NCBI GenBank assembly: GCA_051294905.1
Contig: CM119373.1
Location: forward strand, 35,340,001 to 35,404,000
DNA from: Botryllus schlosseri
Taxonomy: Eukaryota
Reading direction: 5' to 3'
DNA: 64,000 bases
Shown: in pieces, positions 523-64,000 of the stretch
How the letters are laid out: the number at the start of each line of letters is the position of its first letter
Position numbering within the stretch: the first letter of the stretch is position 1
Translations under genes and position numbers: made by a program
Notes under the pieces: model-generated
Database searches by the model: none
What the model was told of the DNA's origin: nothing
The model's input: only the letters and a program-made list of their open reading frames with translations

Positions 523-2115
523 ATGGATGTTGTGAGTAGCTTGCCAGATGAAATGTGGTTGAAGATTCTCGAATACCTTCCACTTCATGACCGTTTTGAA
601 TGGGTCAAACTTACGAAAAAAAGGTTATTTCACCTTGCTGGAGACATATCTGCAGTCCAAGATCTCGATTTTCTCGGATGTAGTTATGTATCGAGCGATC
701 AGTTTTTGAAAATAATCAATCGTTCGACGGACAGTGTGAGATTTTTGTCCTTCCGGGACTGCACATGGCTCTCGAATCAAATCTGCACCACCATGCCGAG
801 ATTGAAAAATCTTGATACACTGGATATACTGGGGTGTTTCTTGAGTAGCGAAACGTTGCACAGTCTACTCCACGCTACGCGTTCCATAAAATGATTGGCT
901 CTATCCACTACCGAACTGGTCATGAAAGATTTTTGTCTGCGGCAGTCAAAACACGAATTGTCACTTCTGGTCTTACATGTAGAATTGCTTCACGATCCCG
1001 GAAAACTCGGCTGGTTTGAAACCAGAACGGTGTTAAAGAATTTTATTAAGACATGTTGTTATTCTAAACCACATTGCATTTCAGTCCAAACTCTCAAGTA
1101 TTTGCCTTTAGATCGTTTTGAAGACATATTCATCGAGACAAATCTTGCTGTTCATAGAGACTCCACCCAGCGAGTGATGCGGGGGGCTTGTGATAAAGCT
1201 TACCATAATCAGATACTGATTGCAGAGACTTTACACAGATATGACAGTCCTCTGTCGGCCGGTTGCTTAGATGATGCCCGGGTGCTCTTTCTTCCTATGC
1301 CGGGATGGAGGCATGGGAGTATGCACGCATCATGTTATTGTGAAGGAATATACCTGCCTGTTGAACTACATGAACTGGAGTATCTTATTTGCTCACGGGA
1401 CGTATATGGTGATGGTACTAGTCCAGATACTGCTGAGGGAGTTTTGCAAAATTGTAGTATTCCGAAACTGACACATCGGGACTTGGGCAGACGGTGCGTT
1501 TCTTATTTTGGTCACGCCGAGGCATTCCCGGGTGTATGCAAGAAATTACCATCTTTCACAAACCTCGTTGAGCTTAATGTGTGTGGGCTGGATTTGAATG
1601 CTAACATGTTTCTATTAGCGATTATGGACATGAAACATTTGAAGGGTTTGTCTTTTTCGCTCCATCTTCCTATTCAATCTGATCCGGATCCTGAACAAGA
1701 CATAATGAATTTCACAACTAAGACATGAGACACGGATGAAAGTTGCAGGTATTCGATGTTTTTATCGAAGTTGGTGAAAAATTTCCCGGATTTGGAAAAG
1801 TTGGAAATAAGTTGTAGCATGGATGCCCGAAAATGCGTTGCTGTCAGTGATTTGGAACCGATTGGGATTCTGGGCAAACTTTGTTATCTATCTCTACATG
1901 GATTCATTTTGGACGATGTAGATCAGCTTGCTCAAATTCTATCCAAATGCATGAAAATATCATCATTGGATCTTGGCCACTTTGAGACTGATGTTGCCCA
2001 TGATTTTTCAGAGTGTTTTGCTTCGTTACGCCATCTCACTTATCTACGACTTGCCCATGATGATTTGGAGTCTGTATCGAAATTCAACGATTTTCACATG
2101 AGTACGTATCTGTAG
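523..2115 (+). pseudogene. F-box/LRR (FBXL18-like) pseudogene, type A
   Basis: F-box LPDEMWLKILEYLPLHDR. In-frame TGA at 892-894 (AGA in paralogs) and 1726-1728 (GGA in 28530 copy). Splice acceptor mutated to ttttcAC at 506-507. 3' end deleted at about 2103, fused to spacer sequence. Confidence 0.9.
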
Positions 2116-2202
2116 GAACACCTTTGTTCTGGCTAAGTCTGTGGCATTTGCCAATCACGGATTGTTTCGACCAATGCCAAAGTGAGAGTGAAGCAGGTAA
2201 GT
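2103..2202 (+). other. Putative non-coding 5' exon and splice donor (GT at 2197) for the 5074 gene
   Basis: aagcag|GTAAGT; the same ~100-nt block precedes most units. Confidence 0.6.
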
Positions 2203-2392
2203 CATAATAATTGCGAACCCTGATAAGTCAATGGTTCTGTCGTCAGCAGAGCCGCCTGTACTGTAAAGTTAGCTTTATACAGCTGGGCCACGAGTCGACA
2301 ATGCCTGTGTTTGACCTTCCTACTCCCTATGTATATGTAGTGACACAGGACCTTATGGTCAACAGACTTCTGTTTTTCCAGTTACTTGATTT

Positions 2393-2736
2393 GGGAGGGA
2401 TATTACGGTACGGGGATGTTAGGGTTAGCAAGGTGGATAGTAGGGTTGGGAGTGGGGGATATTGGAGTTGGGGACGGGGATATTAGGGTTGGGGTAGGGG
2501 CGATATTGGGGTTGAGGTAGGGGGTGTTAGGGTTGGGGGGATATTAGGGTTAGGTTAGGGGTAATATTAGGGTTAGGTTAGGGGTAATATTAGGGCTAGG
2601 TTAGGGGTTAGGGTTAGGTTAGGGGTAATATTAGGGTTAGGTTAGGGGTAATATTAGGGCTAGGTTAGGGGTTAGGGTTAGGTTAGGGGTAATATTAGGG
2701 CTAGGTTAGGGGTAATATTAGGGTTAGGTTAGGGGT
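2393..2736. repeat. G-rich telomere-like minisatellite (about 23-bp unit TAATATTAGGGTTAGGTTAGGGG), G-quadruplex potential
   Basis: Repeated TTAGGG/TTAGG/TTAGGGG motifs read directly; degenerate on the left, regular on the right. Confidence 0.85.
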
Positions 2737-2935
2737 AAGTACACTTGGTATCATGCCCAATTATGCGAGAGTACCTACATGAGTATCTTGGCCGCAAAGT
2801 ACACTTGGTATCATGCCCAATTATGCGAGAGTACCTACATGAGTATCTTGGCCGCAAAGTACACTTGGTATCATGCCCTATTGTGCGAGAGTACCTACAT
2901 GAGTATCTTGGCCGCAAAGTACACTTGGTATCATC
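2737..2935. repeat. 60-bp tandem repeat, about 3.3 copies
   Basis: Unit aagtacacttggtatcatgcccaattatgcgagagtacctacatgagtatcttggccgca recurs at 2737, 2797, 2857 and partially at 2917. Confidence 0.95.
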
Positions 2936-3646
2936 GGGGGATAAACGTCCGACGAGAATCGAATCGGGTCCGCCAAATTAGTGGGCGCTTATCGTTACCA
3001 TTGCGTTATCTCCCCCGCACCTATTATCACACCTTATTATGTGAGTGTCTGTACATGAATGTAATGGGCGCAAAGTGCGTTGTATTTTTTAAATTTTCGA
3101 TAAAAATGCGATACACAATACATAATGTGGTGAAGAGATCGGAGTAAGTCGCTTCCTTGCCCTTTTCCTTCGTTTTCTTGTACAATTTCTTCATCTGGCA
3201 TGCGAGCGAGCGATGTAAAATGTAATCTTGCTCATCACCGGCATGTGTATCTGTGAATTCAAGATGAGTTGTTTATAAGAGGCAATAATATGATATAATA
3301 TGGAACCCCGACTTGATTTATAGGGTTTTGTGATTATAGTGATTATATTGAAAGATGTGCGGCCCGCGGGTTGAGAACCCCTGATTTATAGGGTTTTGTG
3401 GGGAGCACAGTCGGTAACTACGTGAAGCACTATCAATTCCGACACGTTCATGTGCAGCATTAATCGGTGATGGTCATGGGGGTCACTTTCTCGAGGTGGC
3501 CGTATTCTACACTTGACCCTATTTCCTTTAGGTTATGTTGAATATTTGGCTGCTGACTGCTATTGATATTATTTTTACCTTCATTGAAATAGTCCAGATT
3601 CATAACCTAGATTACGGTACTAATTTTCACCTTGAGCAAATGGGCA

Positions 3647-5073: not shown

Positions 5074-6969
5074 ATGATGGTGTCAATAATGGATGTTGTG
5101 AGTAGCTTGCCAGATGAAATGTGGTTGAAGATTCTCGAATACCTTCCACTTCATGACCGTTTTGAATGGGTCAAACTTACGAACAAAAGGTTATTTCACC
5201 TTGCTGGAGACATATCTGCAGTCCAAGATCTCGATTTTCACGGCTGTAGTTACATATCGAGCGATCAGTTTTTGAAAATAATCGATCGTTCAAAAGACAG
5301 TGTGAGATATTTATCTTTCCGGGACTGTCCTTGGCTCTCGAATCAAATCTGCACCACCATGCCAAGATTGAGAAATCTTGTAACACTGGATATACTAGGG
5401 TGTTTCTTGAGTAGCGAAACATTGCACAGTCTACTCCGTGCTACGCACTGCCTAAAAAGGTTGGCTCTATCCACTACGGAACGGGTCATGGGAGATTTTT
5501 GTCGGCTACAGCCAAAGTGTGGATTGTCACTTCAAGTATTGCATGTAGAATTTCTTGAAGATCCCGAAACATTCTACAGGTTCAATTCCAGTATGGCGCT
5601 AAAGAATTTTATCAAGAATTTTTGTCATCCAAAACCACAGTGCGTGTCAGTTCAAACGACCAAGGATTGGATTCTTTTTGATTCTAGGGATATTTTCATA
5701 GAGCCATGTCTTGACGTTTATCGAGACTTCAGCCAATTAGTGACGAGGAAAGATTATACTGAAATGTATCAAAATCATTTACATGTTGCCGTTGCTTTAC
5801 ATCAAGATAACAGTGCTCTGACGACGGGTTGCTTAGATAAAGCCAGGGTACTTTGTTTCCCTAATTGGTTGACAGAACTCGATTTGTTTGCAACTTGTTG
5901 TTGTGAAGGACGTCCCCTCCCTCACACTCTATATGAACTTGAGTATCTGGCTTGCTCAATCGTCAATTATCATCCTGTTCTAGGCCGTTCTGCCGAAGAT
6001 GTTTTACTAAATCGTTGCATTCCTAATCTCACCCATCTAGACTTGGGTAGATGGCGGCGGTATTCTGGTGTCACCAAGGGTATATGCAGGAAATTACCTT
6101 TTTTTACAAACCTTGTTGAGCTGAATGTGTGTGGGCTGGACTTGGATGCTAACATGCTCCTATTTGCAATTAAGGGCATGAAGCATTTGAAGGGTTTGTC
6201 GTTTTTGCTACATACTCCTTTACAATGTGACCATGATCCAAAGCAGAATCTAGTGAATTTTACGGCAACTGAGACAAGGGACACAGATGCGAATTGCAGA
6301 TATTCGATATTTTTGTCAAAATTGGTGAAAACTTTCCCAGATTTTGAGAAGTTGGAAATGATGTGTAGCATGGATGCCAGAAAATGCGTTGCTGTCAGTG
6401 ATTTGGAACCGATTGGGATACTGGCCAAACTTCGTTATCTATCTCTACATAGATTTCCCTTGGACGATGTAGATCAGCTTACGAAAATCCTATCCAAGAG
6501 CACGAAAATAGGATCATTGGATCTCGGTCACTTCGAGACTAAGGATGTCTGTGATTTTTCAAGGTGTTTTGCTTCATTACACAATCTCGTTTATCTACGA
6601 CTTGCACATGATGATTTGGAGTCTGTCTCAAAATTCAAAGATTTGCACACGAGTAGAAATCTTCAAAGATTTTCTCTATATTCGAAGTCCACCTTGTCAG
6701 CAGCGTGGATCGAGTCTTTCTTGAGACCAGTCGTTGCAACCTGTGATCTGTTTTGTATGGGACATATCCAATGTCAAAATGTGGATGAAGATGTGAAAAA
6801 GATGATTGCAAAGTACCGCAATATTTGTGAATCGAAATATCGAAACAACGTGGTATTGTCATGTAGTGATGATCGAAGCAGCCAACATCCAGTCTGTCAA
6901 AGTTGGCAGGGAAGGTCGTTTTCATCTGTTGCCACATACAGCCCATTTGACTTCCTAAAGATGCCTTGA
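5074..6969 (+). CDS. FBXL18: F-box/LRR-repeat protein, FBXL18-like, type B (intact, 631 aa; family start ATG at 5089)
   Basis: N-terminal F-box, LxxLxL repeats, family C-terminus HPVCQSWQGRSFS. Motifs resemble human FBXL18 as recalled (VRYLSFRDCPWL ~ IQQLSMAGCYWL; LQRFSLYSKSTL ~ LQRLCLVSRSGTL). The symbol is family-level and was not confirmed by a search. Confidence 0.85.
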   Translation: MMVSIMDVVSSLPDEMWLKILEYLPLHDRFEWVKLTNKRLFHLAGDISAVQDLDFHGCSYISSDQFLKIIDRSKDSVRYLSFRDCPWLSNQICTTMPRLRNLVTLDILGCFLSSETLHSLLRATHCLKRLALSTTERVMGDFCRLQPKCGLSLQVLHVEFLEDPETFYRFNSSMALKNFIKNFCHPKPQCVSVQTTKDWILFDSRDIFIEPCLDVYRDFSQLVTRKDYTEMYQNHLHVAVALHQDNSALTTGCLDKARVLCFPNWLTELDLFATCCCEGRPLPHTLYELEYLACSIVNYHPVLGRSAEDVLLNRCIPNLTHLDLGRWRRYSGVTKGICRKLPFFTNLVELNVCGLDLDANMLLFAIKGMKHLKGLSFLLHTPLQCDHDPKQNLVNFTATETRDTDANCRYSIFLSKLVKTFPDFEKLEMMCSMDARKCVAVSDLEPIGILAKLRYLSLHRFPLDDVDQLTKILSKSTKIGSLDLGHFETKDVCDFSRCFASLHNLVYLRLAHDDLESVSKFKDLHTSRNLQRFSLYSKSTLSAAWIESFLRPVVATCDLFCMGHIQCQNVDEDVKKMIAKYRNICESKYRNNVVLSCSDDRSSQHPVCQSWQGRSFSSVATYSPFDFLKMP

Positions 6970-9248: not shown

Positions 9249-11102
9249 ATGGATATTGTGAGCAGCTTGCCAGATGAAATTTGGTTGAAGATTCTCGAAT
9301 ACCTTCCACTGCATGACCGTTTTGAAAGGGTCAAATTTACAAACAAAAGGTTTTATCACCTTGCGGGAAACATATCTGGAGTCCAAGATCTCGATTTTCA
9401 CGGCTGTAGTTATGTATCGAACGATCAGTTTTTGAAAATAATCAATCGTTCAAAGGACAGTGTGAGATTTTTGTCGTTTCGGGACTGTACTTGGTTCTCG
9501 AATCAAATCTGCACCACCATGCCGAGATTGGAAAATCTTGTTACACTGGATGTATTGGGTTGTTTCTTGAGTAGCGAAACATTACACAGTCTACTTGGTG
9601 CCACATGCTCCTTAAAAAGACTGGCTCTATCCATTACGGAACCGGTCATGACAGATTTTTGTCTCTTGAAGTCAAAACGCAGATTGTCACTTCGAGTCTT
9701 GCATGTGGAATTGCTTCACGATCCCAAAACTCTCTATGGTAGCGTAAGCCAAATCATGGTGTTGAGTGATTTTATTAATACATGCTGTCACATGCCGCAC
9801 TGCGTTTCAGTCCAAACGCCGAAGTATATACTTCTCGATGATTTTAAAAACATTATGATTGAGGCAAATCCTGCGATTGATCGTGACTCCATCCAAATGG
9901 TGACGAGGGCAGCTTGTGATGAAACTTATCTAAATCGGTTACTGATTGCCGTTGCTTTACATAGGGATGTGAGTTCTCTGTCGGTTGGTTGCTTAGATGA
10001 ATCGCGATTACTCTGCCTTCCTATGCAGATAAGACATGAGAACTTACTCGCATCTGAACTACATACGCATTTTTTTCCCCCGCGGGACGAATATGTTGAT
10101 GATCCAGATTCTGCTGAGGCAGTTTTGTTAAATTGCTGGATCCCAAAACTGAGACATCTAAACATCGACAGATATTGTAGTTTTGATTTTGGTGTCATTG
10201 ATGTATCTCCTCGTATATGCAAGAAACTACCAACTTTCACAAACCTTGTTGAGCTCAATGTATGTGGGCTGGATTTGCATGCTAACATGCTTCTATTAGC
10301 GATTATGGATATGGAACATTTGAAGGGTTTGTCTTTTTCGCTCCATCTTCCTAAACAATGTGAGCTGGATCCAGGGCAGGATGTGTGGAATTATAAAGCT
10401 GAGACAATAGACGCCGATGAAGAAAGTTGCAGATATTCGATATTTTTGTCGAAATTGGTGAACAATTTCCCGGATTTGAAAAAGCTTGAAATGAAGTGTA
10501 GCGAACATGCCCGAAAATTCGTTTCTGTCAGTGAATTGGAACCAATCGGGATACTGGGCCAACTTCGCCATCTATCTCTACACAGATTCATTTTGGACGA
10601 TGTAGATCAGCTTGCGCAAATCCTATCCAAATGCATGAAAATATCATCATTGGATCTTGGTCACTTTGAGACTGATGTTGCCCATGATTTTTCAGAGTGT
10701 TTTGCTTCGTTACGCCATCTCACTTATCTACGACTTGCCCATGATGACTTGGACGGTGTATCGAAATTCCACGATTTGCACATGAGTAGCAATCTTCGAA
10801 GATTCACTTTTTATTCAGATTGCGCATTGTCAGCAGCGTGGATCGAGTCATTTCTGGGACCGGTTGTTGCAACTTGTGATCTGTTCTGTATGTGCCATAT
10901 CGAATGTCAATATGTGAATGCGGCTGTGAAAAAGTTGATTGAAAAGTACCGGAAGCTTTGTGAATCAAAATATCGTAACAATGTGGTGTTGTCATGCAGT
11001 AATGAACTTGTCAGCCAACATCCAGTGTGTCAAAGTTGGCAGGCACGTTCGTTCTCTACTGTTGCCATGTGCAGCCCTTTTGACTTCGTAAAGAGACCAT
11101 GA
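9249..11102 (+). CDS. FBXL18: F-box/LRR-repeat protein, FBXL18-like, type C (intact, 617 aa)
   Basis: Uninterrupted ORF with F-box, LRRs and conserved C-terminus; in-frame internal deletion after NLLAS. Confidence 0.85.
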   Translation: MDIVSSLPDEIWLKILEYLPLHDRFERVKFTNKRFYHLAGNISGVQDLDFHGCSYVSNDQFLKIINRSKDSVRFLSFRDCTWFSNQICTTMPRLENLVTLDVLGCFLSSETLHSLLGATCSLKRLALSITEPVMTDFCLLKSKRRLSLRVLHVELLHDPKTLYGSVSQIMVLSDFINTCCHMPHCVSVQTPKYILLDDFKNIMIEANPAIDRDSIQMVTRAACDETYLNRLLIAVALHRDVSSLSVGCLDESRLLCLPMQIRHENLLASELHTHFFPPRDEYVDDPDSAEAVLLNCWIPKLRHLNIDRYCSFDFGVIDVSPRICKKLPTFTNLVELNVCGLDLHANMLLLAIMDMEHLKGLSFSLHLPKQCELDPGQDVWNYKAETIDADEESCRYSIFLSKLVNNFPDLKKLEMKCSEHARKFVSVSELEPIGILGQLRHLSLHRFILDDVDQLAQILSKCMKISSLDLGHFETDVAHDFSECFASLRHLTYLRLAHDDLDGVSKFHDLHMSSNLRRFTFYSDCALSAAWIESFLGPVVATCDLFCMCHIECQYVNAAVKKLIEKYRKLCESKYRNNVVLSCSNELVSQHPVCQSWQARSFSTVAMCSPFDFVKRP

Positions 11103-11924: not shown

Positions 11925-12197
11925 ATTTTCATCAGGCTGCAGCGTGGATCCAGTCATTTCTGGGATCTGTCGTTGCAACCTGGGACCTATCGAATGTGAA
12001 AAGATTTTCGCGAATGTGAGAAAGGTCATGGCAAAATACCGGAATATTTGCAAAACGAAGTATCGTAGCAGTGTGGTGTTGTCGTGAAGGTGCAATGATT
12101 ATCATCTCAGCCAATATCCAGTATGTCAATGTTGGCAATGAAGGTCATTTACAACTGTGGCCATATACTAACCTTTTGACTTCTAAATATGCCTCGG
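11925..12197 (+). pseudogene. C-terminal relic of F-box/LRR paralog
   Basis: Near-identical to 18-293, with an extra 16-bp deletion. Confidence 0.8.
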
Positions 12198-12425: not shown

Positions 12426-14263
12426 ATGGATGTTGTGAGTAGCTTGCCAGATGAAATGTGGTTGAAGATTCTCGAATACCTTCCACTTCATGACCGTTTT
12501 GAATGGGTCAAACTTACGAAAAAAAGGTTATTTCACCTTGCTGGAGACATATCTGCAGTCCAAGATCTCGATTTTCTCGGATGTAGTTATGTATCGAGCG
12601 ATCAGTTTTTGAAAATAATCAATCGTTCGACGGACAGTGTGAGATTTTTGTCCTTCCGGGACTGCACATGGCTCTCGAATCAAATCTGCACCACCATGCC
12701 GAGATTGAAAAATCTTGATACACTGGATATACTGGGGTGTTTCTTGAGTAGCGAAACGTTGCACAGTCTACTCCACGCTACGCGTTCCATAAAATGATTG
12801 GCTCTATCCACTACCGAACTGGTCATGAAAGATTTTTGTCTGCGGCAGTCAAAGTGTGGATTGTCACTTCAAGTATTGCATGTAGAATTTCTTGAAGATC
12901 CCGAAACATTCTACAGGTTCAATTCCAGTATGGCGCTAAAGAATTTTATCAAGAATTTTTGTCATCCAAAACCACAGTGCGTGTCAGTTCAAACGACCAA
13001 GGATTGGATTCTTTTTGATTCTAGGGATATTTTCATAGAGCCATGTCTTGACGTTTATCGAGACTTCAGCCAATTAGTGACGAGGAAAGATTATACTGAA
13101 ATGTATCAAAATCATTTACATGTTGCCGTTGCTTTACATCAAGATAACAGTGCTCTGACGACGGGTTGCTTAGATAAAGCCAGGGTACTTTGTTTCCCTA
13201 ATTGGTTGACAGAACTCGATTTGTTTGCAACTTGTTGTTGTGAAGGACGTCCCCTCCCTCACACTCTATATGAACTTGAGTATCTGGCTTGCTCAATCGT
13301 CAATTATCATCCTGTTCTAGGCCGTTCTGCCGAAGATGTTTTACTAAATCGTTGCATTCCTAATCTCACCCATCTAGACTTGGGTAGATGGCGGCGGTAT
13401 TCTGGTGTCACCAAGGGTATATGCAGGAAATTACCTTTTTTTACAAACCTTGTTGAGCTGAATGTGTGTGGGCTGGACTTGGATGCTAACATGCTCCTAT
13501 TTGCAATTAAGGGCATGAAGCATTTGAAGGGTTTGTCGTTTTTGCTACATACTCCTTTACAATGTGACCATGATCCAAAGCAGAATCTACTGAATTTTAC
13601 GGCAACTGAGACAAGGGACACTGATGCGAGTTGCAGATATTCGATATTTTTGTTACAATTGGTGAAAATTTTCGCAGATCTTGAGAAGTTGGAAATGATG
13701 TGTAGCATGGATGCCAGAAAATGCGTTGCTGTCAGTGATTTGGAACCAATTGGAATGCTGGCCAAACTTCGTTATCTATCTCTACATAGATTTCCCTTGG
13801 ACGATGTAGATCAGCTTACGAAAATCCTATCCAAGAGCACGAAAATAGGATCATTGGATCTCGGTCACTTCGAGACTGATGATGTCTGTGATTTTTCAAG
13901 GTGTTTTGCTTCATTACGCAATCTCGTTTATCTACGACTTGCACATGATGATTTGGAGTCAGTCTCAAAATTCAAAGATTTGCACATGAGTAGAAATCAT
14001 TAAAGATTAACCTTGTCTTTAAATTCCTTTTTGTCAGCAGTGTGGATCGAGTCGTTTCTGGGACTGGTCGTTGCAACGTGCGATCTGTTTTGTATGTGCC
14101 ATATCACATGTAGAAATGAGGATGCAGAAATTGAAAAGGTCATTGAAAGATACCGCAATATTTGTGAATCGAAATACCGTAAAAGGATGATATTGTCATG
14201 CAGTGATGACCGTATCAGTCACCATCCAGTTTGTCAAAGTTGGGAGGGACGGTCATTTTCGTC
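12426..14263 (+). pseudogene. Chimeric F-box/LRR pseudogene (A 5' / B middle / K-like 3')
   Basis: 5' end matches the 523 copy including TGA at 12795-12797; from 12854 matches the 5074 copy; CAA>TAA at 14001-14003; 3' end matches 44370-44640 and then loses the stop codon by deletion. Confidence 0.9.
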
Positions 14264-16739
14264 TGATTTCATTATACGTCTTGCGTTTTTCCATATATAT
14301 CAGAACGATATTGACGTTGGCGTACTATCCATGATGCCAATTGTATGACATGATTCATAATTCGAGATGGATCAAATGTGAAGAGTAGGTAGTTGAATAG
14401 AAATTTTCACAACCCTTCACAACTGATGGAGAATATGATCCGCAATAGTTCACTTAAGGCTAATTTTTTATTCATGTGATGGTCCTGTAGCTTACATGAC
14501 AAAATATGATTTACCTCATTGGCAGTTGATAGATTTATGTTGATTTTATGGTATTAACCACTATCTACATTCTACAGTATCAGCTACCATTATTGCAGTT
14601 GTTATGTATTAAGGCAGCTGTCTTCTTTCATAGATTTATGCACATAAATTTCATTCCTTGTAAAAGTGCAAGCGGTCGTTTTGTGTTGGGTGGAACACTC
14701 TAGATGTTATGGAGATCCTTTGCCAGATTATAGTCCAAATGCTGATGGCAAAGCATTAAACATTTCCTTTGTTGTTTGGATCATTGTAAGTTAAGAGTCA
14801 TTCATAATGGATTTTTATTTCGAATTTTTACACTGTGTGTTAGTATTGATTTTCACATTCCATTTCATACATGAACACTGTTATGTTCAATATTTCTCTT
14901 ATTTCTGGTACCACCTGTTGTTTCTGTTTCTGACTGTTTGCGTATTTGACATCTTGCTAGTTGTCACATGCAATGGGAATGATATATCATGATTCTAGCT
15001 AATGGTACCTTGCAATATCATTTAATAGGGCATGACTTTGAATCAGCCTGAAAAACTCCTCTGACAAGACGATGTCTGCAATCTCAAAATATTTGAAAAT
15101 GGTGTCTTCAAATCTTTATCGTAATACTGAATATTCAAGTCACAAAATTGCAGATTCTGTGTATTGCTCGAGGGGCTGAATTACATTGACACAGTATTAG
15201 CTCATAAGAAACACTTCAAATATGAAAATCCTTTATGAAATTAAGTTCAAATACTGAGGCAAACGCAAAGAACTTGGTCCACGGTATTGGTGTCACCGCA
15301 GATATGGTATTAAATAAGTTGACCATCTTGAGTGATGGAATTTTATTTGCAATGTTGGCACCGTGTTATAGTGTTCATTTCTACATTCTATATCATTCAT
15401 GAACACGGTAGTGTTAATTAGTGCTGTTATTTCAACCCTCGGCTTCTGTTTTGACTAGAAATTTGGCGCCTTACCTGTTACTGGTATGATTCATCATTAT
15501 TCTACCTGGCGGTACCTTGCAGTATTATCATGTATGGCTTGAATTTGATGTAGTCTAAAAACTCCTATACAGTAACTAAAATGTGTCTTCAAACCGTGAT
15601 CCTTCTCCTTAACATTCAAGACGTAAAATTGCAGTTTTTCTATATTGCTCGGACTGCTTATCTACAATTTCACAGTATTAACTCTCATTCAAAGCTATGT
15701 GGAAAAATTCATAAATTACTCAACCTAATTACTGTAAAAGTGTCGTGTGCTAATTAAGCACCAGATTGTGTCAGTGTGATTTCATCAGTTCATCATGCCA
15801 AATGCAAAGCACCGCATTGTCTTTCCGTACTTTCCTTCCCTGTGACTAATATTTTATTCATGACTCCTGACTTAGCATTGTGATATCAAGTTTTCTTTGG
15901 TGTTAATTGTTGACATTGTGATAACGCCTATTATATTTCTTTGTTGACAGAAGCTATTAAGTTAGATGAGTCTATGAAGGAAAACTTTCTTCTGAATTGA
16001 ATAAGTCTGTGGCATTTGCTAATCAAGGATCGTTTGGACCAGTGCCGGAGTGTTAGTAAAGCAGGTAAACTACATTTAATTATCGTGACTCCAGATAGGC
16101 CATTGGCCCTTGTCCTTAGTTCTACAGAGCTGCCTAGCAGTACTGCCTTATTCAGAGTATTGTAAAGTTAGCTTTGTAGAGCTGGGCTACTTGTCGGCGA
16201 TGCCCGTGCTTTACCTCCCTATTGGATATTGTCACTCCCTATGTATATGTAATTAGTAGTGTAGTGTCACAGGCCGCCCTGACTTCTGTATATTCAGTTA
16301 TTAAATATGTGCCAGTTCTTGTGTAATCTGTATGACCTATTTAGTCATCATCATTTAGTACATCAGGTAAACTACATTTAATAATCGTGATTCCTGATAG
16401 CCCATTTGTCCTGTGGTCTGCCTTATTCAGATTTTCGTAAAGTTAGCTTTGTAAAGCTTGCCTGTGTTTGACCTCCCTTTGTATATGTATGTAGTGTCAC
16501 AGGCCACCCGGCTTCGGTATTTTCAGTTATTAAATTCGTGCCAGTTCTTGTGTAATCTGTATAACTTATTTAGTCATTACATGTCCTTAAAGCTGGTTCC
16601 GTAGGGGATATTTCTGTAAGGTTGTATCGAACATTTGGCTACTTCTATCAATATTAGCTTTTCCACCGTTGAAATATTTCAGATGCAAAACCTAGACTAC
16701 ACTACTAATTTTAACCTCGAGCAGAGGTGCAGTACAATG

Positions 16740-22815: not shown

Positions 22816-23079
22816 ATGGATATTGTGAGCAGGTTGCCTGATGAAATGTGGACAAAGATTCTCGATTATCTCCCAGTACACGACCGTCTCGAATGGGTGA
22901 AATACACAAACAAAAGATTTTTTCAGCTTGCTGGAGATGTCTCTGCTGTCCAAAATCTCGATTTTCGTGGACGTAGTTATGTGTCCAATAGCATGTTTCA
23001 GAAAATACTCAATTGTTCAAAAGACAGTGTGAGATTTTTATCTTTCCGGGACTGCGCTTGGCTCTCGAATGAAATTTGC
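22816..23079 (+). pseudogene. N-terminal fragment (F-box plus about 2 LRRs)
   Basis: MDIVSRLPDEMWTKILDYLPVHDRLEW...NEIC, then fused to spacer sequence homologous to about 61512. Confidence 0.85.
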
Positions 23080-47120: not shown

Positions 47121-47378
47121 GAGTCATTTCTGGGACCGGTTGTTGCAACTTGTGATCTGTTCTGTATGTGCTATATCGAATGTCAAAATGTGAATGCGGC
47201 TGTGAAAAAGATGATTTCAAAGTACCAAAATATTTGTGAATCGAAATATCCTAACAACGTGGTATTGTCATGTAGTGATGATCGTATCAGCCAACATCCA
47301 GTATGCCAAAGTTGGCAGGGAAGGTCGTTTTCATCTGTTGCCACATGCAGCCCTTTTGACTTTGTAAAGAGACCATGA
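47121..47378 (+). pseudogene. C-terminal fragment fused to the intronic MITE
   Basis: gaatttgaatct|gagtcatttctgggaccgg...; ends SPFDFVKRP*. Confidence 0.85.
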
Positions 47379-47826: not shown

Positions 47827-48072
47827 ATGGATATTGTGTGCAGCTTGCCTGATGAACTGTGGATAAAGATTCTTGATTATCTCCCGGTACATGACCGTCT
47901 TGAATGGGTGAAACATACAAACAAAAGATTTTTTGAGCTAGCCGGAGATGTCTCTGCTGCCCGAAATCTTGATATTCAAAAATGCAGTTATGTGTCCAAT
48001 GACATGCTTTTGGAAATACTCAATCGTTCAAAATACAGTTTGAGATATTTATCTTTCCTGGACTGCGCTTGG
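47827..48072 (+). pseudogene. N-terminal fragment (F-box plus about 2 LRRs), sister of 22816
   Basis: MDIVCSLPDELWIKILDYLPVHDRLEW...DCAW, then spacer sequence. Confidence 0.85.
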
Positions 48073-48590
48073 GTGGGTGGAAGTGAGTGGGTGGTGTCGT
48101 TATTTCTGTCGTTTCATCGATAGTGCTCAGAGCTATTCTAATGTGGTCTAGCAGCTACCGGGCATGTCAATTGTATGTGATGGTGTACGATTTGAAAAGG
48201 ATCAAAATAGGATAAGTACGGTAGTTTCATCCAAATTTTCACACCGATCCAAAAATCCACCGAATATGAATCCGCTGTGATCCATTTGTTCCATTTTCAT
48301 CTAATTCATGGTTGCCTTGTCACTTCCATGTCTGTAATATGTTAATTACTGCATTGGCAGTAAATGAATTGGTGATGATGTTTACAGTGTGCGATTGTAT
48401 TGATTTCCACATTCAGTTCCATACATGTAGATGGTTATGTTGATTTTTGCTGTTATTTGCAACTGTGGTTTCTGTGTCTTTCCGCATATTTAACATCTTG
48501 CCAGTTTCATATGTATTTGGTTTGATTTATCGTTATTCCACTTGACAGTTCCTTGCAGTATCGTCAAAACTCCTATAGCAAATCGATATC

Positions 48591-49452: not shown

Positions 49453-51339
49453 ATGGATATTGTGAGCAGCTTGCCAGATGAAATGTGGTTGAAGATTCTC
49501 GAATACCTTCCACTGCATGACCGTTTTGAATGGGTCAAACTTACAAACAAAAGGTTTTTTCGCCTTGCTGGCGACATATCTGCAGTCCAAGATATCGATT
49601 TTCGCGGCTGTAGTTACGTATCGAGCGATCAGTTTTTGAAAATAATCGATTGTTCAAAAGACAGTGTGAGATATTTATCTTTCCGGGACTGTCCTTGGCT
49701 CTCGAATCAAATCTGCACCACCATGCCGAGATTGAGAAATCTTGTTACACTGGATATATTAGGGTGTTTCTTGAGTAGCGAAACATTGCACAGTCTACTC
49801 CGTGCTACGCACTGCCTAAAAAGGTTGGCTCTATCCACTACGGAACAGGTCATGGGAGATTTTTGTCGGCTACAGCCAAAGTGTGGATTGTCACTTCAAG
49901 TATTGCATGTAGAATTTCTTGAAGATCCCGAAACATTTTACAGATTCGAGTCCAGTATGGCGCTAAAGAATTTTATCGAGAATTGTTGTCATCCAAAACC
50001 ACAATGCGTGTCAGTTGAAACGATCAAGGATTGGACTCTTTTTGATTGTAGGGATATTTTCATAGAGCCAAATCTTGACAATCATCGAGGCTCCAGCCAA
50101 TTAGTGATGAGGAAACATTATACTGAAACGTACGAAAATCATTTACATGTTGCCGTTGCTTTACATCAAGATGGCAGTGCTCTGACGACGGGTTGCTTAG
50201 ATAAAGCCAGGGTACTTTGTTTCCCTAATTGGTTGACGGAACTCGATTTTTATGCGACATGTTGTTGTGATGGACGTCCCCTCCCTAACACTCTATATGA
50301 ACTTGAGTATCTGGCTTGCTCAAGCGACAATGAATTTTATGATCCTGTCCCAGGCCATTCTGCCGAAGACGTTTTACTAAATTGTTGCATTCCTAATCTC
50401 ACCCATCTAGACTTGGGTAGATGGCGGCGGTATTCTGGTGTCACCAAGGGTATATGCAGGAAATTACCATTTTTTACAAACCTTGTTGAGCTGAATGTGT
50501 GGTGGCTGGACTTGGATGCTAACATGCTCCTATTTGCAATTATGGGCATGAAGCATTTGAAGGGTTTGTCGTTTTTGCTACATATTCCTTTACAATGTGA
50601 CCATGATCCAAAGCAGAATCTAGTGAATTTTACGGCAACTGAGACAAGGGACACAGATGCGAGTTGCAGATATTCAATATTTTTGTCAAAATTGGTGAAA
50701 ACTTTCCCAGATTTTGAGAAGTTGGAAATGATGTGTAGCATGGATGCCAGAAAATGCGTTGCTGTCAGTGATTTGGAACCGATTGGGATACTGGCCAAAC
50801 TTCGTTATCTAACTCTACATAGATTTCCCTTGGACGATGTAGATCAGCTTACGAAAATCCTATCCAAGAGCACGAAAATAGGGTCATTGGATCTCGGCCA
50901 CTTCGAGACTAATGATGTCTGTGATTTTTCAAGGTGTTTTGCTTCATCACGCAATCTCGTTTATATACGACTTGCGCATGATGATTTGGAGTCTGTCTCA
51001 AAATTCAAAGATTTGCACGTGAGTAGAAATCTTCAAAGATTTTCTCTATATTCGAAGTCCACCTTGTCAGCAGCGTGGATCGAGTCTTTCTTGAGACCAG
51101 TCGTTGCAGCCTGCAATCTGTTTTGTATGGGACACATCCAATGTGAAAATGTGGATGAAGATTTGAAAAAGATGATTGCAAAGTACCAAAATATTTGTGA
51201 ATCGAAATATCGCAACAACGTGGTATTGTCATGTAGTGATGATCGAAGCAGCCAACATCCAGTCTGTCAAAGCTGGCAGGGAAGGTCGTTTTCATCTGTG
51301 GCCACATACAGCCCATTTGACTTCCTAAAGATGCTTTGA
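49453..51339 (+). CDS. FBXL18: F-box/LRR-repeat protein, FBXL18-like, type B (intact, 628 aa)
   Basis: Uninterrupted ORF; closest paralog is 5074. Confidence 0.85.
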   Translation: MDIVSSLPDEMWLKILEYLPLHDRFEWVKLTNKRFFRLAGDISAVQDIDFRGCSYVSSDQFLKIIDCSKDSVRYLSFRDCPWLSNQICTTMPRLRNLVTLDILGCFLSSETLHSLLRATHCLKRLALSTTEQVMGDFCRLQPKCGLSLQVLHVEFLEDPETFYRFESSMALKNFIENCCHPKPQCVSVETIKDWTLFDCRDIFIEPNLDNHRGSSQLVMRKHYTETYENHLHVAVALHQDGSALTTGCLDKARVLCFPNWLTELDFYATCCCDGRPLPNTLYELEYLACSSDNEFYDPVPGHSAEDVLLNCCIPNLTHLDLGRWRRYSGVTKGICRKLPFFTNLVELNVWWLDLDANMLLFAIMGMKHLKGLSFLLHIPLQCDHDPKQNLVNFTATETRDTDASCRYSIFLSKLVKTFPDFEKLEMMCSMDARKCVAVSDLEPIGILAKLRYLTLHRFPLDDVDQLTKILSKSTKIGSLDLGHFETNDVCDFSRCFASSRNLVYIRLAHDDLESVSKFKDLHVSRNLQRFSLYSKSTLSAAWIESFLRPVVAACNLFCMGHIQCENVDEDLKKMIAKYQNICESKYRNNVVLSCSDDRSSQHPVCQSWQGRSFSSVATYSPFDFLKML

Positions 51340-58156: not shown

Positions 58157-58169
58157 TAACTCTCATGTT

Positions 58170-58527: not shown

Positions 58528-60282
58528 ATGGATATTGTGAGCAGCTTGCCATATGAAATGTGGTTGAAGATTCTCGAATACCTTCCACTGCATGACCGTT
58601 TTGAATGGGTCAAATTTACAAACAAAAGGTTTTTTCACCTTGCGGGAGACATATCAGCAGTCCAAGATCTCGATTTTCACGGATGTAGTTATGTATCGAA
58701 CGATCAGTTTTTGAAAATAATCAATCGTTCGAAGGACAGTGTGAGATTTTTGTCCTTCCGGGACTGCGCTTGGCTCTCGAATCAAATCTGCACCACCATG
58801 CCGAGATTGAAAAATCTTGTTACACTGGACATATTGGGGTGTTTCTTGAATAGCGAAACATTACACAGTCTACTTGGTGCCACATGCTCCATGAAAAGAT
58901 TGGCTCTATCCACTACGGAACTGGTCATGACGGATTTTTGTCGGCTGCAGTCAAAATGCGGATTGTCACTTCTAGTCTTGCATGTGGAATTGCTTCACGA
59001 TCCAGGAAAACTCTGTAGTATCCAAACCAGAACGGCGTTGAGGGATTTTATCAGGACATGCTGTCATTCTAATCCACACCGCGTTTCATTTCAAACGCAC
59101 AAGCAGTTTGATCTACAAGAGTTGAAAGATATGTCCTGGGAGGGGAATCTCAAGATATGCAAAGTGTTCACACAAAGCGTGGTGAGGGATGCTTATGATC
59201 AACAATACCAAACTGACACACTAGTTGCTCTTCCTTTAAATCAAGATGGCTCTCCTCCTTACTTGCGGGACGAACATTATGATGAGCTAGCTTTACCTGA
59301 GGCAGTTTTTCTGAATCACAGCATTCGGAAAGTGACACATCTAGACTTAAGCAACAGTCGCGCTCTTTTAATTTATGAATTCAAGGGTTTATATAAGAAA
59401 TTACCATCTTTCACAAACCTTGTTGAGCTGAACGTGTGTGGACTGGACTTGGATGCCAACATGCTCCTGTTATCGATTATGGACTTGAAACATTTAATCG
59501 GTTTGTCTTTTTCCCTCCATCTTCCTTTACAATGTAAGCAGGATCCAAATCAAAATGTATTGAATATTACGACAACTGAGACAAGAGACTCAGATGCAAG
59601 TTACAGTTATTCGGTATTTTTGTGGAAATTGGTGAAATGTTTCCCAAATTTGGAAAAGCTGGAAATGAGGTATTGCGTGAATGCCCGAAAATACTCTACT
59701 GTTAGCGATTTGGAAGCGATTGGCATGTTGAACAAACTTCGTTATCTCTCCCTACATAGATTTCCTTTGAACGATGTAGATCAGCTTGCAGACATCTTCT
59801 CCAAATGCACGAATATAGCATCATTGGATCTCGGTCACTTTGAGACTGATGTTGCCTGTGAATTTTCAAAGTGTTTTGCTTCGTTGCGCAATCTCGTTTA
59901 TCTACGACTTGCCCATGATGATTTGGAGTCAGTATCAAAATTCAAAAATTTGCATGTGGGCAGAAATCTTCAAAGATTCACTTTGTATTCAAAGTCCACT
60001 TTGTCAGCGGCGTGGATCGAGACATTTCTTGGACCGGTTGTTGCAACCTGCAATCTGTTCTGTATGTGCCATATCGAATGTAAGAATGTGGATGCAGATG
60101 TTAGAATGCTGATTGCAAAATACCGGAACATTTGTGATTCGAAATACCGTAGCAAGGTGATATTGTCATGCAGTGATAATAGTATTAGCCAACATCCAGT
60201 GTGCCAAAGTTGGCATGGCCGCTCGTTATCGCATGTTGCCCTATACAGCCCTTTTGACATTGTAAAAAATGGCATGCTGTAG
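58528..60282 (+). CDS. FBXL18: F-box/LRR-repeat protein, FBXL18-like, type D short form (intact, 584 aa)
   Basis: Uninterrupted ORF; altered last residues GML*. Confidence 0.85.
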   Translation: MDIVSSLPYEMWLKILEYLPLHDRFEWVKFTNKRFFHLAGDISAVQDLDFHGCSYVSNDQFLKIINRSKDSVRFLSFRDCAWLSNQICTTMPRLKNLVTLDILGCFLNSETLHSLLGATCSMKRLALSTTELVMTDFCRLQSKCGLSLLVLHVELLHDPGKLCSIQTRTALRDFIRTCCHSNPHRVSFQTHKQFDLQELKDMSWEGNLKICKVFTQSVVRDAYDQQYQTDTLVALPLNQDGSPPYLRDEHYDELALPEAVFLNHSIRKVTHLDLSNSRALLIYEFKGLYKKLPSFTNLVELNVCGLDLDANMLLLSIMDLKHLIGLSFSLHLPLQCKQDPNQNVLNITTTETRDSDASYSYSVFLWKLVKCFPNLEKLEMRYCVNARKYSTVSDLEAIGMLNKLRYLSLHRFPLNDVDQLADIFSKCTNIASLDLGHFETDVACEFSKCFASLRNLVYLRLAHDDLESVSKFKNLHVGRNLQRFTLYSKSTLSAAWIETFLGPVVATCNLFCMCHIECKNVDADVRMLIAKYRNICDSKYRSKVILSCSDNSISQHPVCQSWHGRSLSHVALYSPFDIVKNGML

Positions 60283-61904: not shown

Positions 61905-62018
61905 TTAGTTGAAGTTGGGTACGTATCTGAAGGACAACTTTCTTCTTGCCAAGTGTGTGCCATTTGCTAATCAAGGACTGCTTCAACCTGTGCCAAAGTG
62001 ACAGTGAAGCAGGTAAGC
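61905..62018 (+). other. Putative 5' exon and donor (GT at 62013); intron to 63013
   Basis: gaagcag|GTAAGC; acceptor cttctattttcag. Confidence 0.62.
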
Positions 62019-62346
62019 TCTAATAATCATGAACTCTGATAGGCCTATGGTTCTGTAGGCTGCAGAGCTGCCGGTGCTGTAAAGTTAGCTTTCTAATCCT
62101 AGCCCACTAGTCGACAATGCCCGTGTTAGACCTTCCTACTCCATACATAGGCCCAGTTCTTGTGTAATCTTTATGAGCTATTTAGTCATTGCATATCCTC
62201 AAAGCTGGGGTCGTAGGTGATATTTCTGTAAGGGTATGTTGATTATTTGGCTACTAACGGCTATTGATGTTATTTTTACCTCCATTGTAATATCCCAGAT
62301 TCATAACCTAGATTACGGTACCAATGATCACCTTGAGCAAAGGCGC

Positions 62347-62773
62347 AAGGCTGGGCACAAAGATTTGAATACTCGAATCTTAATCAAGTAATAATACGGA
62401 TGCAATGTATTCGGGTAGCATGATTTTATTTCGAATACTGAACTTCCACTATCCCTGCTATAATGTGTTACTTTAGCAATGAATGTAAAGTTGATAGTAA
62501 TTTCTAATGCTGAATGTTTGAAATCTCAATTATTTGTGTCACAGTAGCATACCAAACGTTTAACATGTATTGGAAAGGTATAAATTGCCTCCATGTGGTG
62601 TCTAATTAGTATTACGGTACTGAACCGTGTATACTTCACGGTAGCATGAGTGCTTCTTATTTAAACCGTCCCCGTCTTTCGTACTTCTGTATCGTCACAA
62701 TGAGTGAAGCTAGATTACTCGACTCTAACTGTAGTACTCGATTCACTCAAGTATTCGATTCTGGCTAGCCTCA
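62347..62773 (+). mobile_element. Ancient intronic hAT-type MITE (unit-resident copy)
   Basis: Homologous to 8532-8963. Confidence 0.7.
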
Positions 62774-63057
62774 GTACGAAATCAAGATGATTGTAAAAAT
62801 GTATTAGTCCAAAACATGCTTAGTTGTATAAATTGGGTTTTTGAAGGACTATGCTTCTGAATTTGTACATATTGATTTGGAGCATAGCTTTGGATTTCAT
62901 GTTTGGACTGCAAACCATCGAACTATTCTTCTCTAAAAATCTGACCTTATTTTCCTAATTCAAATAAGCGTTGCTCGTTTATCATTTCAATTGTATCACC
63001 CTTCTATTTTCAGATGATAGTGTCGAGTTGAAGCTTTTCGTGTGGTAAGATTCAATA

Positions 63058-64000
63058 ATGGATGTTGTGAGCAGCTTGCCAGATGAAATGTGGTTGAAGA
63101 TTCTCGAATACCTTTCACTGCATGACCGTTTTGAATGGGTCAAATTTACAAACAAAAGGTTTTTTCACCTTGCGGGAGACATATCGGCAGTCCAAGATCT
63201 CGATTTTCACGGATGTAGTTATGTATCGAACGATCAGTTTTTGAAAATAATCAATCGTTCGAAGGACAGTGTGAGATTTTTGTCCTTCCGGGACTGCGCT
63301 TGGCTCTCGAATCAAATCTGCACCACCATGCCGAGATTGAAAAATCTTGTTACACTGGACATATTGGGGTGTTTCTTGAATAGCGAAACATTACACAGTC
63401 TACTTGGTGCCACATGCTCCATGAAAAGATTGGCTCTATCCACTACGGAACTGGTCATGACGGATTTTTGTCGGCTGCAGTCAAAATGCGGATTGTCACT
63501 TCTAGTCTTGCATGTGGAATTGCTTCACGATCCAGGAAAACTCTGTAGTATCCAAACCAGAACGGCGTTGAGGGATTTTATCAGGACATGCTGTCATTCT
63601 AATCCACACCGCGTTTCATTTCAAACGCACAAGCAGTTTGATCTACAAGAGTTGAAAGATATGTCCTGGGAGGGGAATCTCAAGATATGCAAAGTGTTCA
63701 CACAAAGCGTGGTGAGGGATGCTTATGATCAACAATACCAAACTGACACACTAGTTGCTCTTCCTTTAAATCAAGATGGCTCTCCTCCTTACTTGCGGGA
63801 CGAACATTATGATGAGCTAGCTTTACCTGAGGCAGTTTTTCTGAATCACAGCATTCGGAAAGTGACACATCTAGACTTAAGCAACAGTCGCGCTCTTTTA
63901 ATTTATGAATTCAAGGGTTTATATAAGAAATTACCATCTTTCACAAACCTTGTTGAGCTGAACGTGTGTGGACTGGACTTGGATGCCAACATGCTCCTGT
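63058..64000 (+). CDS. FBXL18: F-box/LRR-repeat protein, FBXL18-like, type D (partial, runs off the window; missed by the ORF track)
   Basis: ATG GAT GTT GTG AGC AGC TTG CCA GAT GAA...; open to the window end and identical to the 58528 copy from about 63187. Confidence 0.85.
   Translation, partial: MDVVSSLPDEMWLKILEYLSLHDRFEWVKFTNKRFFHLAGDISAVQDLDFHGCSYVSNDQFLKIINRSKDSVRFLSFRDCAWLSNQICTTMPRLKNLVTLDILGCFLNSETLHSLLGATCSMKRLALSTTELVMTDFCRLQSKCGLSLLVLHVELLHDPGKLCSIQTRTALRDFIRTCCHSNPHRVSFQTHKQFDLQELKDMSWEGNLKICKVFTQSVVRDAYDQQYQTDTLVALPLNQDGSPPYLRDEHYDELALPEAVFLNHSIRKVTHLDLSNSRALLIYEFKGLYKKLPSFTNLVELNVCGLDLDANMLL

What the first reader, a model, noticed from the sequence alone, without database searches (positions are those of the whole stretch)
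523..64000. Large tandem array of FBXL18-like SCF adaptors with a hypervariable central LRR block: candidate diversifying recognition system
Seen: at least 13 near-full-length copies plus about 9 relics in 64 kb. The F-box, first LRRs and C-terminal LRRs are strongly conserved, but short segments directly after each central LxxLxL strand differ radically. After LHVELLHD: PGKLGWFE / PETFYRFN / PKTLYGSV / PGKVRSDE / PEKISSRQ / TETICSQE / PGKLCSIQ. After the THLDL-type strand: GRRCVSYFG / GRWRRYSG / DRYCSFDFG / FTSYRSIP / CHRLCSYF / GDRRTLLN / SNSRALLI. Every indel in the intact copies preserves frame. Known: F-box proteins bind Skp1 through the F-box and substrate through LRRs, vertebrate FBXL18 is single-copy, and expanded positively selected F-box families in nematodes and plants have been proposed to target foreign proteins. 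Inference: a birth-and-death repertoire of ubiquitin-ligase receptors, possibly for pathogen, viral, transposon or allorecognition targets.
Basis: partly seen in the sequence, partly recalled or inferred. Interest (0 to 1): 0.88.

Follow-up and report, generated by a model that had tools for sequence, protein, structure and literature searches.

The report
Tandem FBXL18-like F-box gene array
The window is almost entirely a same-strand cluster of 13 single-exon genes for F-box/leucine-rich-repeat ubiquitin-ligase adaptors, probably in a sea squirt. Their two ends are conserved and their middle loops change at about the neutral rate, a kind of expansion already known from worms and plants, and no expression was seen.

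Summary
There are 13 near-full-length copies, all on the + strand. Seven are intact ORFs, five are disabled and one is cut by the window end. There are also 8-10 relics and one LTR retroelement. All quoted variable peptides are present.

The closest known family is FBXL18. Three lines agree: a Pfam N-terminal hit at threshold, language-model features, and predicted-fold TM of 0.57-0.70 against about 0.33-0.54 for the next family. Similarity is remote (17% identity), and orthology is untested.

Only five real relatives appeared among 1.84 billion representative proteins. Four come from one unnamed run and one from the ascidian Styela clava. The family therefore looks narrowly distributed on current data, and this species' copies are absent from the searched protein collections.

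Selection differs by block:
- The N- and C-terminal blocks are under purifying selection (omega 0.33 and 0.43).
- The central block has omega 0.69 overall, about 1 between recent duplicates, and 1.0-1.5 in loops just after the strands.
- A site-class test favours some omega>1 sites in the centre only (p 3e-4). It is marginal with intact genes alone (p 0.047) and is lost after strict gap filtering.

Copies are recombinant mosaics. No expression was seen in three bulk RNA runs. Birth-and-death evolution is shown, diversifying recognition is plausible but unproven, and the targets are unknown.

The parts
523..2112 (+). Copy c523, a pseudogene. In-frame stops at codons 124 and 402; homology ends near codon 528; the acceptor motif is mutated to CAC.
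5089..6969 (+). Copy c5089, an intact ORF (631 aa if read from the ATG at 5074).
9249..11102 (+). Copy c9249, an intact ORF of 617 aa.
12426..14264 (+). Copy c12426, a pseudogene and recombinant mosaic. Stops at codons 124 and 526. About nt 1-400 is 100% identical to c523, and about nt 450-1200 is 100% identical to c5089.
19739..21628 (+). Copy c19739, with a premature stop at codon 534 and otherwise full length.
25293..27185 (+). Copy c25293, an intact ORF of 630 aa. It is the reference for the model and the numbering.
28530..30172 (+). Copy c28530, a pseudogene with a stop at codon 408 and a 250-bp deletion that shifts the frame.
33805..35670 (+). Copy c33805, an intact ORF.
38248..39972 (+). 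Copy c38248, an intact short form of 574 aa with in-frame deletions of about 55 aa in total in the central block.
42837..44682 (+). Copy c42837, in which a 41-bp deletion shifts the frame after codon 511.
49453..51339 (+). Copy c49453, an intact ORF of 628 aa and a recent duplicate of c5089 (dS 0.07).
58528..60282 (+). Copy c58528, an intact short form of 584 aa. The LTR element lies about 150 bp upstream of its ATG.
63058..64000 (+). Copy c63058, cut by the window end and nearly identical to c58528.
16..280 (+). Relic: a C-terminal fragment lying upstream of c523.
11935..12183 (+). Relic: a C-terminal fragment.
22816..23082 (+). Relic: an N-terminal fragment covering codons 1-89.
28024..28288 (+). 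Relic: a C-terminal fragment.
31046..31456 (+). Relic: a C-terminal fragment covering codons 492-629.
40233..40358 (+). Relic: a C-terminal fragment.
47124..47375 (+). Relic: a C-terminal fragment.
47827..48081 (+). Relic: an N-terminal fragment covering codons 1-85.
25743..26363 (+). Central variable block of the reference copy (codons 151-357). M0 omega is 0.69, and this is the only block with support for an omega>1 site class.
25237..25253 (+). Conserved 3' splice-acceptor-like motif TTCTATTTTCAG|ATGAT, 11-56 nt upstream of the ATG. A match precedes every one of the 13 copies.

Best explanation
The window holds a young, lineage-specific tandem cluster of genes with a single coding exon. Each encodes an F-box followed by a long, irregular leucine-rich-repeat solenoid whose nearest known family is FBXL18. 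The host is probably an ascidian.

The products are most likely substrate receptors of SCF (Skp1-Cul1-Rbx1) ubiquitin ligases. In that model the conserved N-terminal F-box and first repeats dock on Skp1. The conserved C-terminal repeats and tail keep a common scaffold or a shared partner. The central repeats carry loops after their beta-strands that differ between paralogues.

The cluster grows and decays by segmental duplication, unequal crossing-over or gene conversion, and pseudogenisation.

Shown here: the anatomy of the cluster, the relationship to FBXL18, purifying selection on both ends, a near-neutral to mildly positive regime in the central loops, and the recombinant mosaics.

Inferred, not shown: Skp1 binding, that the central loops contact substrates, that their divergence is adaptive, and any target.
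For: Thirteen same-strand copies and their relics. Homology extends 240-950 bp upstream of the ATG, and larger blocks are duplicated (8298-12395 matches 24342-28500 at 91%; 3-491 matches 28011-28499 at 98%).

F-box and FBXL18-type LRR Pfam hits. A family profile matches the F-box plus first repeats of SKP2 (1fs2, E 1.5e-7) and FBXL17.

The AF2 model has pLDDT 67.9 and pTM 0.70 and shows alternating strand and helix. Its best reviewed match is human FBXL18, at TM 0.57/0.51 and E 3e-14; the next family reaches 0.33. In the Atlas shape search FBXL18 scores 0.70/0.63 and the next family 0.54. The Atlas feature search also ranks FBXL18 first.

Full-length relatives at 22-30% identity conserve the centre and the C-terminal tail.

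Omega is below 1 in the intact genes: N block p 1e-9, C block p 1e-15. M2a beats M1a only in the centre: LRT 15-16.5 there, 0 in the N and C blocks. Recent pairs of intact genes have central pN/pS of 0.84-1.07 against 0.2-0.5 in the flanks. Omega rises from about 0.35 in strands to about 0.7 at 5-7 residues after the strand end. The candidate sites lie 1-12 residues after central strands.

Segment trees disagree, and c12426 contains tracts 100% identical to two different copies.
Against: No expression was found. Two bulk RNA runs gave 3-12 reads on 5.9 kb, and a third gave 64 reads that mostly fit only in part. No indexed RNA-Seq run was listed as holding c5089.

The positive-selection signal is modest. 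It is marginal with intact genes only (p 0.047), absent after strict gap filtering, and open to inflation by recombination and by loop misalignment.

The strand residues on the concave face, which are the usual LRR recognition surface, are conserved rather than variable.

Much of the centre (residues 197-250, 260-278, 292-301 and 322-332) is modelled with pLDDT below 50, so it may be flexible linker rather than a binding surface.

Synonymous divergence is also higher in the centre (pS 0.41 against 0.25). Part of the contrast therefore reflects homogenisation of the flanks.
Confidence: 0.7

Rival explanations
1. Neutral 'genomic drift'. The copies are redundant duplicates whose central repeats have simply lost constraint. 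In this reading the variable loops are flexible spacers, and their divergence has no role in recognition.
For: M1a assigns about 53% of central sites to omega = 1. Recent pairs have central pN/pS of about 1. The variable segments coincide with low-confidence parts of the model. Five of the 12 complete copies are already disabled. No expression was seen. Genomic drift has been proposed for plant F-box families (PMC3030570).
Against: M2a fits better than M1a in the centre only (LRT 15-16.5). The centre still contains constrained strands and motifs that are conserved in relatives at 28-30% identity, so a block average near 1 implies that some sites are above 1. Indels in the intact copies keep the reading frame.
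Confidence: 0.3
2. A germline- or embryo-restricted F-box cluster, or a selfish or incompatibility element. It would resemble the oocyte-type Fbxw12 cluster of mouse or the newborn F-box genes that cause hybrid incompatibility in Caenorhabditis, rather than an immune repertoire.
For: Silence in the bulk RNA runs examined fits narrow expression. The turnover is rapid, tandem and species-specific. Precedents are described in PMC3984280 (the mouse Fbxw12 cluster) and in PMC11573670 and PMC12951971 (Caenorhabditis).
Against: There is no direct evidence. The tissues behind the RNA runs are unknown to me, and no partner or antidote gene lies in the window: the spacers hold no recognisable domains.
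Confidence: 0.12
3. A dead array: all copies are unexpressed pseudogenes or decaying retro-copies, and the long ORFs survive only because the copies are young.
For: No expression was detected. There are many disabled copies and relics. The coding sequence has no introns.
Against: Omega is significantly below 1 in the N and C blocks of the intact copies at dS up to 0.57. Seven ORFs of about 600 codons are intact. An acceptor-like motif and about 240 bp of upstream sequence are conserved. Distant relatives in other species have the same single-exon layout with intact ORFs.
Confidence: 0.08

Closest known systems
FBXL18 (F-box/LRR-repeat protein 18; Pfam PF19729)
   Same: It has an F-box followed by a solenoid of irregular LRRs about 600 residues long. 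It is the best match by Pfam (positions 6-82), by language-model features, and by predicted fold (TM 0.57-0.70 over nearly the full length).
   Different: Identity is 17%, and Pfam covers only the first 13% of the profile, at or near the cut-off. Here the family is multi-copy and tandem and its coding sequence is a single exon, whereas primates and mouse have one FBXL18 gene and rat has a second, retrocopied one (PMC3984280). The conserved C-terminal tail (SQHPVCQSW...VA.xSPFD) has no known counterpart that I could test.
Expanded, positively selected F-box families of Caenorhabditis and plants
   Same: These are lineage-specific tandem expansions that evolve by birth and death, with a conserved F-box and a fast-evolving substrate-side domain (PMC8120010, PMC8665587, PMC3030570).
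   Different: Those families mostly carry FBA, FTH, kelch or other C-terminal domains and number in the hundreds. Here the variable part is an FBXL-type LRR and the host is probably a chordate. The evidence for selection here is weaker.
Mouse Fbxw12 gene cluster
   Same: It is a tandem cluster of F-box receptor genes specific to one chordate lineage (PMC3984280).
   Different: It has WD40 rather than LRR substrate domains, and its genes are multi-exon.
TIR1 / COI1 (plant F-box LRR hormone receptors)
   Same: They are the best solved-structure matches (TM about 0.4). From general knowledge, long loops that leave the LRRs after the strands form the ligand pocket in those proteins, which is a precedent for binding through such loops.
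   Different: There is no sequence relationship beyond the F-box/LRR class, and TM is below 0.5.

Membership tests
F-box protein (SCF substrate receptor) | An F-box motif at the N-terminus | tested here: met
   Pfam F-box scores 19.7-21.8 bits against a cut-off of 20.5 in the window copies, and 28 bits in relative P0001. The family profile matches the SKP2 and FBXL17 F-box plus first LRRs at E 1.5e-7 to 4e-7. P8, W12 and R24 are invariant across species.
F-box protein (SCF substrate receptor) | Binds Skp1 and assembles with Cul1 | not testable with these tools
   This needs a complex prediction or pull-down. Only single chains could be modelled here.
FBXL class | The F-box is followed directly by an LRR solenoid | tested here: met
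   The model alternates strand and helix from residue 47 to 598. All top fold matches are F-box/LRR proteins.
FBXL18 family (PF19729) | A full-length match to the family's LRR profile above the gathering score | tested here: inconclusive
   Scores are 24.7, 27.1 and 31.9 bits against a cut-off of 27. Only profile positions 6-82 of 591 are matched. Relatives score 16-19 bits.
FBXL18 family (PF19729) | A fold closer to FBXL18 than to other FBXL proteins | tested here: met
   In Swiss-Prot AFDB, FBXL18 scores TM 0.57/0.51 and FBXL13 0.33. In the Atlas, FBXL18 scores TM 0.70/0.63 and the next families at most 0.56. Both sides are predictions, and the query model has pLDDT 68.
FBXL18 family (PF19729) | Groups with FBXL18 orthologues in a phylogeny or by reciprocal best hit | not tested
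   No tool gave me an FBXL18 sequence, and two word-index searches returned nothing.
Diversifying recognition repertoire | A multi-copy cluster with birth-and-death turnover | tested here: met
   There are 7 intact copies, 5 disabled copies, one copy cut by the window end, and 8-10 relics. dS among copies ranges from 0.07 to 0.57, and some copies are mosaics.
Diversifying recognition repertoire | A class of sites with omega>1 in the recognition domain | tested here: inconclusive
   The M2a-versus-M1a LRT is 15-16.5 (p 3e-4 to 5e-4) in the centre and 0 elsewhere. With the 7 intact genes it is 6.1 (p 0.047), and after strict gap filtering 2.5 (not significant). Block omega is 0.69.
Diversifying recognition repertoire | The variable sites lie on a ligand-contacting surface | not testable with these tools
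   The sites lie in loops 1-12 residues after the strands. The strand residues themselves are conserved. I had no model coordinates, and no ligand is known.
Diversifying recognition repertoire | Expressed, ideally in response to challenge | tested here: not met
   Three bulk RNA runs gave essentially no reads on 24200-30100, and no indexed RNA-Seq run was listed for c5089. Only 6-13% of each run was read, the tissues are unknown, and only one stretch was laid.

The most novel reading that the evidence does not exclude
A chordate (tunicate) has built a rapidly diversifying intracellular repertoire of FBXL18-derived SCF receptors. In this reading the post-strand loops are under positive selection to tag changing non-self or selfish targets for degradation. 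Such targets could be viral or transposon proteins, gamete or allorecognition determinants, or partners in hybrid incompatibility. It would be an animal LRR counterpart of the nematode and plant F-box 'immune' expansions or of S-locus F-box systems.
Probability: 0.12. Interest if true: 0.8.

Novelty: new member of a known kind. Interest (0 to 1): 0.5.

Why it matters
Fast-turning-over F-box families are thought to act as intracellular surveillance or conflict genes in nematodes and plants. Clear examples among chordates are few. This array would add an FBXL18-derived, LRR-type example from what is probably a tunicate.

The searches suggest the family has not been described. No protein within 50% identity appeared among 1.84 billion cluster representatives, and literature searches found no report of it.

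The array also offers a compact system for studying how recombination homogenises the two ends of a gene while the centre diverges: 7 intact paralogues with a defined variable block. Without expression data or known targets, its biological importance remains open.

Tried and rejected
- Two homologous-protein searches, one with a single copy and one with a 9-sequence alignment, returned nothing.
- A single-sequence search of the PDB gave only weak FBXL17 hits.
- The first AF2 model, built from the 7 paralogues alone, was poor (pLDDT 54) and was replaced by a model from 15 sequences.
- afdb_clusters gave only generic F-box/LRR matches with TM below 0.4.
- The literature searches I ran found no report of F-box expansions in ascidians, tunicates, Styela or Botryllus. 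The run SRR25569784, which holds the relatives, is not mentioned in the library.
- ORFs in the spacers have no Pfam domains.
- I considered that the strong contrast between centre and ends might be pure positive selection and rejected that reading. Synonymous divergence is also higher in the centre, and the flanks show tracts 100% identical between copies, so homogenisation contributes.
- I could not map sites on the 3D model because the coordinates are not exposed.


Full report
**What is there**

The window has 39% GC and no N. It is filled by one gene family on the + strand. tblastn with the 630-aa ORF at 25293-27185 finds 13 near-full-length copies. They start at 523, 5089, 9249, 12426, 19739, 25293, 28530, 33805, 38248, 42837, 49453, 58528 and 63058. 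The last copy runs off the window end.

The same search finds eight short relics, and blastn adds two smaller fragments. Each copy's coding sequence is a single exon.

Seven copies are intact ORFs of 574-634 aa: c5089, c9249, c25293, c33805, c38248, c49453 and c58528. Five copies are disabled:
- c523 has stops at codons 124 and 402 and is truncated at the 3' end.
- c12426 shares the codon-124 stop with c523 and has another at codon 526.
- c19739 has a stop at codon 534.
- c28530 has a stop at codon 408 and a 250-bp deletion.
- c42837 has a 41-bp deletion.

In the intact copies every indel keeps the reading frame.

Homology extends 240-950 bp upstream of each ATG, and larger blocks are duplicated. 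Region 8298-12395 matches 24342-28500 at 91%, and 3-491 matches 28011-28499 at 98%. The array therefore grew by segmental tandem duplication.

The spacers carry no recognisable domains. The exception is one LTR retroelement at 53605-58377, with 199-nt LTRs that are 98% identical and RNase H and integrase domains. It lies about 150 bp upstream of the c58528 start codon.

**What the protein is**

Pfam finds an F-box at residues 5-25/47 and, as the best LRR family, LRR_FBXL18 (PF19729). That hit covers only profile positions 6-82 of 591, and its scores straddle the cut-off: 24.7-31.9 bits against 27.

A profile of the family matches the F-box plus first repeats of SKP2 (E 1.5e-7) and FBXL17 among solved structures.

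An AF2 model from 15 sequences has pLDDT 67.9 and pTM 0.70. It is a strand/helix solenoid from residue 47 to 598. Residues 197-250, 260-278, 292-301, 322-332 and 384-405 are modelled with low confidence.

Three fold or feature comparisons point to FBXL18:
- Among reviewed proteins, the best match is human FBXL18 (E 3e-14, TM 0.57/0.51, 17% identity, query residues 7-594). FBXL13 follows at TM 0.33.
- In the ESM Atlas shape search, the FBXL18 cluster scores TM 0.70/0.63 over 563 residues, and the next families at most 0.56.
- The Atlas feature search also ranks FBXL18 first.

Solved structures give only generic matches such as COI1 and TIR1, at TM about 0.4.

"FBXL18-like" is therefore justified as the nearest family. 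Orthology was not tested.

**Distribution**

An exhaustive profile search of 1.84 billion representative proteins listed only five true relatives among its best 150 hits. The other listed hits were giant generic LRR proteins, and hits ranked lower were not shown.
- P0001-P0003 and P0032 are 22-30% identical over the full length. All four come from one Logan-assembled run of an unnamed organism. Each is again a single coding exon, and L002 and L003 have an acceptor-like site just upstream of the ATG.
- P0095 is an uncharacterised 304-aa protein of the ascidian Styela clava.

I did not verify the species.

No representative lies within 50% identity of the window's proteins. This species' copies are therefore absent from the searched protein collections.

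The cross-species alignment conserves motifs inside the central block (R.L.LP; C.C....P..L..L.YL) and a C-terminal tail. The centre is thus part of the fold and not an arbitrary insert.

**Selection**

Pairwise dS among the intact copies is 0.07-0.57, with whole-gene dN/dS of 0.3-0.6.

I wrote a GY94+F3X4 likelihood that reproduces the IQ-TREE log-likelihoods exactly.

| Block | M0 omega | M2a vs M1a LRT |
|---|---|---|
| N (codons 1-150) | 0.33 | 0 |
| Centre (151-357) | 0.686 | 15.0 (p 5e-4) |
| C | 0.43 | 0.03 |

In the centre, M2a places 9.5% of sites at omega of about 2.5.

Omega below 1 is significant in all three blocks of the intact genes, at p 1e-9, 1e-3 and 1e-15. This rules out a dead array.

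Robustness of the central signal:
- 10 non-redundant copies: LRT 16.5.
- 7 intact copies only: LRT 6.1 (p 0.047).
- Two halves of the block, each on its own tree: LRT 12.7 and 8.9.
- Strict gap filtering, which keeps only 89 codons: LRT 2.5 (not significant).

Three independent recent pairs of intact genes have central pN/pS of 0.84, 1.07 and 1.02. Their flanks are at 0.2-0.5.

By predicted secondary structure, omega is about 0.37 in strands and 0.86 in central loops. It rises from about 0.35 within the strand to about 0.7 at 5-7 residues after the strand end. Ten-residue blocks peak at 161-170 (1.07), 261-270 (1.17) and 321-330 (1.52).

The sites with the highest posterior for omega>1 are alignment columns 167, 194, 268, 301, 333 and 334. 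They lie 1-12 residues after central strands.

The caveats are recombination, loop alignment, few lineages, and branch lengths that were only rescaled. My reading is that the centre mixes constrained scaffold sites, many effectively neutral sites, and probably a few positively selected ones.

**Recombination**

The trees for the three blocks disagree.

c12426 is 100% identical to c523 over about nt 1-400 and 100% identical to c5089 over about nt 450-1200. This confirms another first-stage note on this window.

The C-terminal part of c523 resembles c9249. Synonymous divergence is lower in the flanks (0.25) than in the centre (0.41). Homogenisation of the ends therefore contributes to the contrast between conserved ends and variable centre.

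**Expression and gene structure**

A 3' acceptor-like motif, TTCTATTTTCAG|ATGAT, precedes all 13 copies 11-56 nt before the ATG. There are 14 matches against 0.85 expected by chance, and in the pseudogene c523 the motif is CAC. This suggests either a 5'-UTR intron or spliced-leader trans-splicing. No RNA evidence decides between them.

Laying three bulk RNA runs on 24200-30100 gave 12, 3 and 64 reads. These were mostly partial fits in the spacer, so they probably come from paralogues or repeats. No joints were reported. Older contig sets hold only short fragments. No indexed RNA-Seq run was listed as holding c5089.

Expression is therefore not shown. Only 6-13% of each run was read, only one stretch could be laid, and the tissues are unknown.

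**Verdict**

The birth-and-death F-box/LRR array and its FBXL18 affinity are well supported.

Diversifying recognition is plausible but rests on a moderate, partly fragile statistical signal. No expression or target is known.

Lineage-specific F-box expansions with fast-evolving substrate domains are well known in nematodes and plants (PMC8120010, PMC8665587, PMC3030570, PMC11573670). F-box clusters also exist in mammals (PMC3984280). This array is a new member of a known kind, in a new host lineage and a new FBXL subfamily.

Noticed in passing
window 53605-58377: A Ty3/gypsy-type LTR retroelement with 199-nt LTRs at 53605-53803 and 58179-58377 that are 98% identical. Its 3' pol ORF at 56003-58156 is intact (RNase H, integrase), but the 5' part is broken into several ORFs. 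It splits the conserved upstream region of c58528 about 150 bp before the ATG, and that gene's ORF is still intact.
   Followed up: partly
window 25237-25253 and the equivalent sites before every copy: A conserved polypyrimidine-CAG acceptor lies 11-56 nt upstream of each start codon, preceded by about 240 bp of conserved sequence that includes the invariant ATGTATCAT. In most copies the AG is followed by a 5-codon upstream ORF (ATGATAGTG...TGA). In c523, c5089, c12426 and c28530 a 41-nt deletion puts that ATG in frame with the gene. Whether the site serves a 5'-UTR mini-intron or spliced-leader trans-splicing is undecided.
   Followed up: partly
window 24200-24345: Contig word depth in run X1 jumps to about 666 here, against 0-15 elsewhere. 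Several different loose ends begin at 24343-24346. This points to the edge of a high-copy interspersed repeat.
   Followed up: no
window 38248-39972, 58528-60282, 63058-64000: Three copies share in-frame loss of about 44-55 residues of the central block (the segment LS.GCLD..RVLCLP...C.C....LP..LHELEYL), which is roughly two irregular repeats. Two of them keep intact ORFs, so a shorter solenoid seems to be tolerated.
   Followed up: partly
all copies, last ~40 codons (e.g. window 27060-27182): The C-terminal tail SQHPVCQSWQGRSFS.VA.xSPFD is conserved, and its end (VA.C.PFD) is kept in relatives that are only 25-28% identical. It has no Pfam match, and its role is unknown.
   Followed up: no
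L001-L004 (Logan run SRR25569784): Four paralogues that are only 23-34% identical to each other occur in one unnamed run. The family is therefore old and diversified in at least one other species, while the window's array is a young burst.
   Followed up: partly
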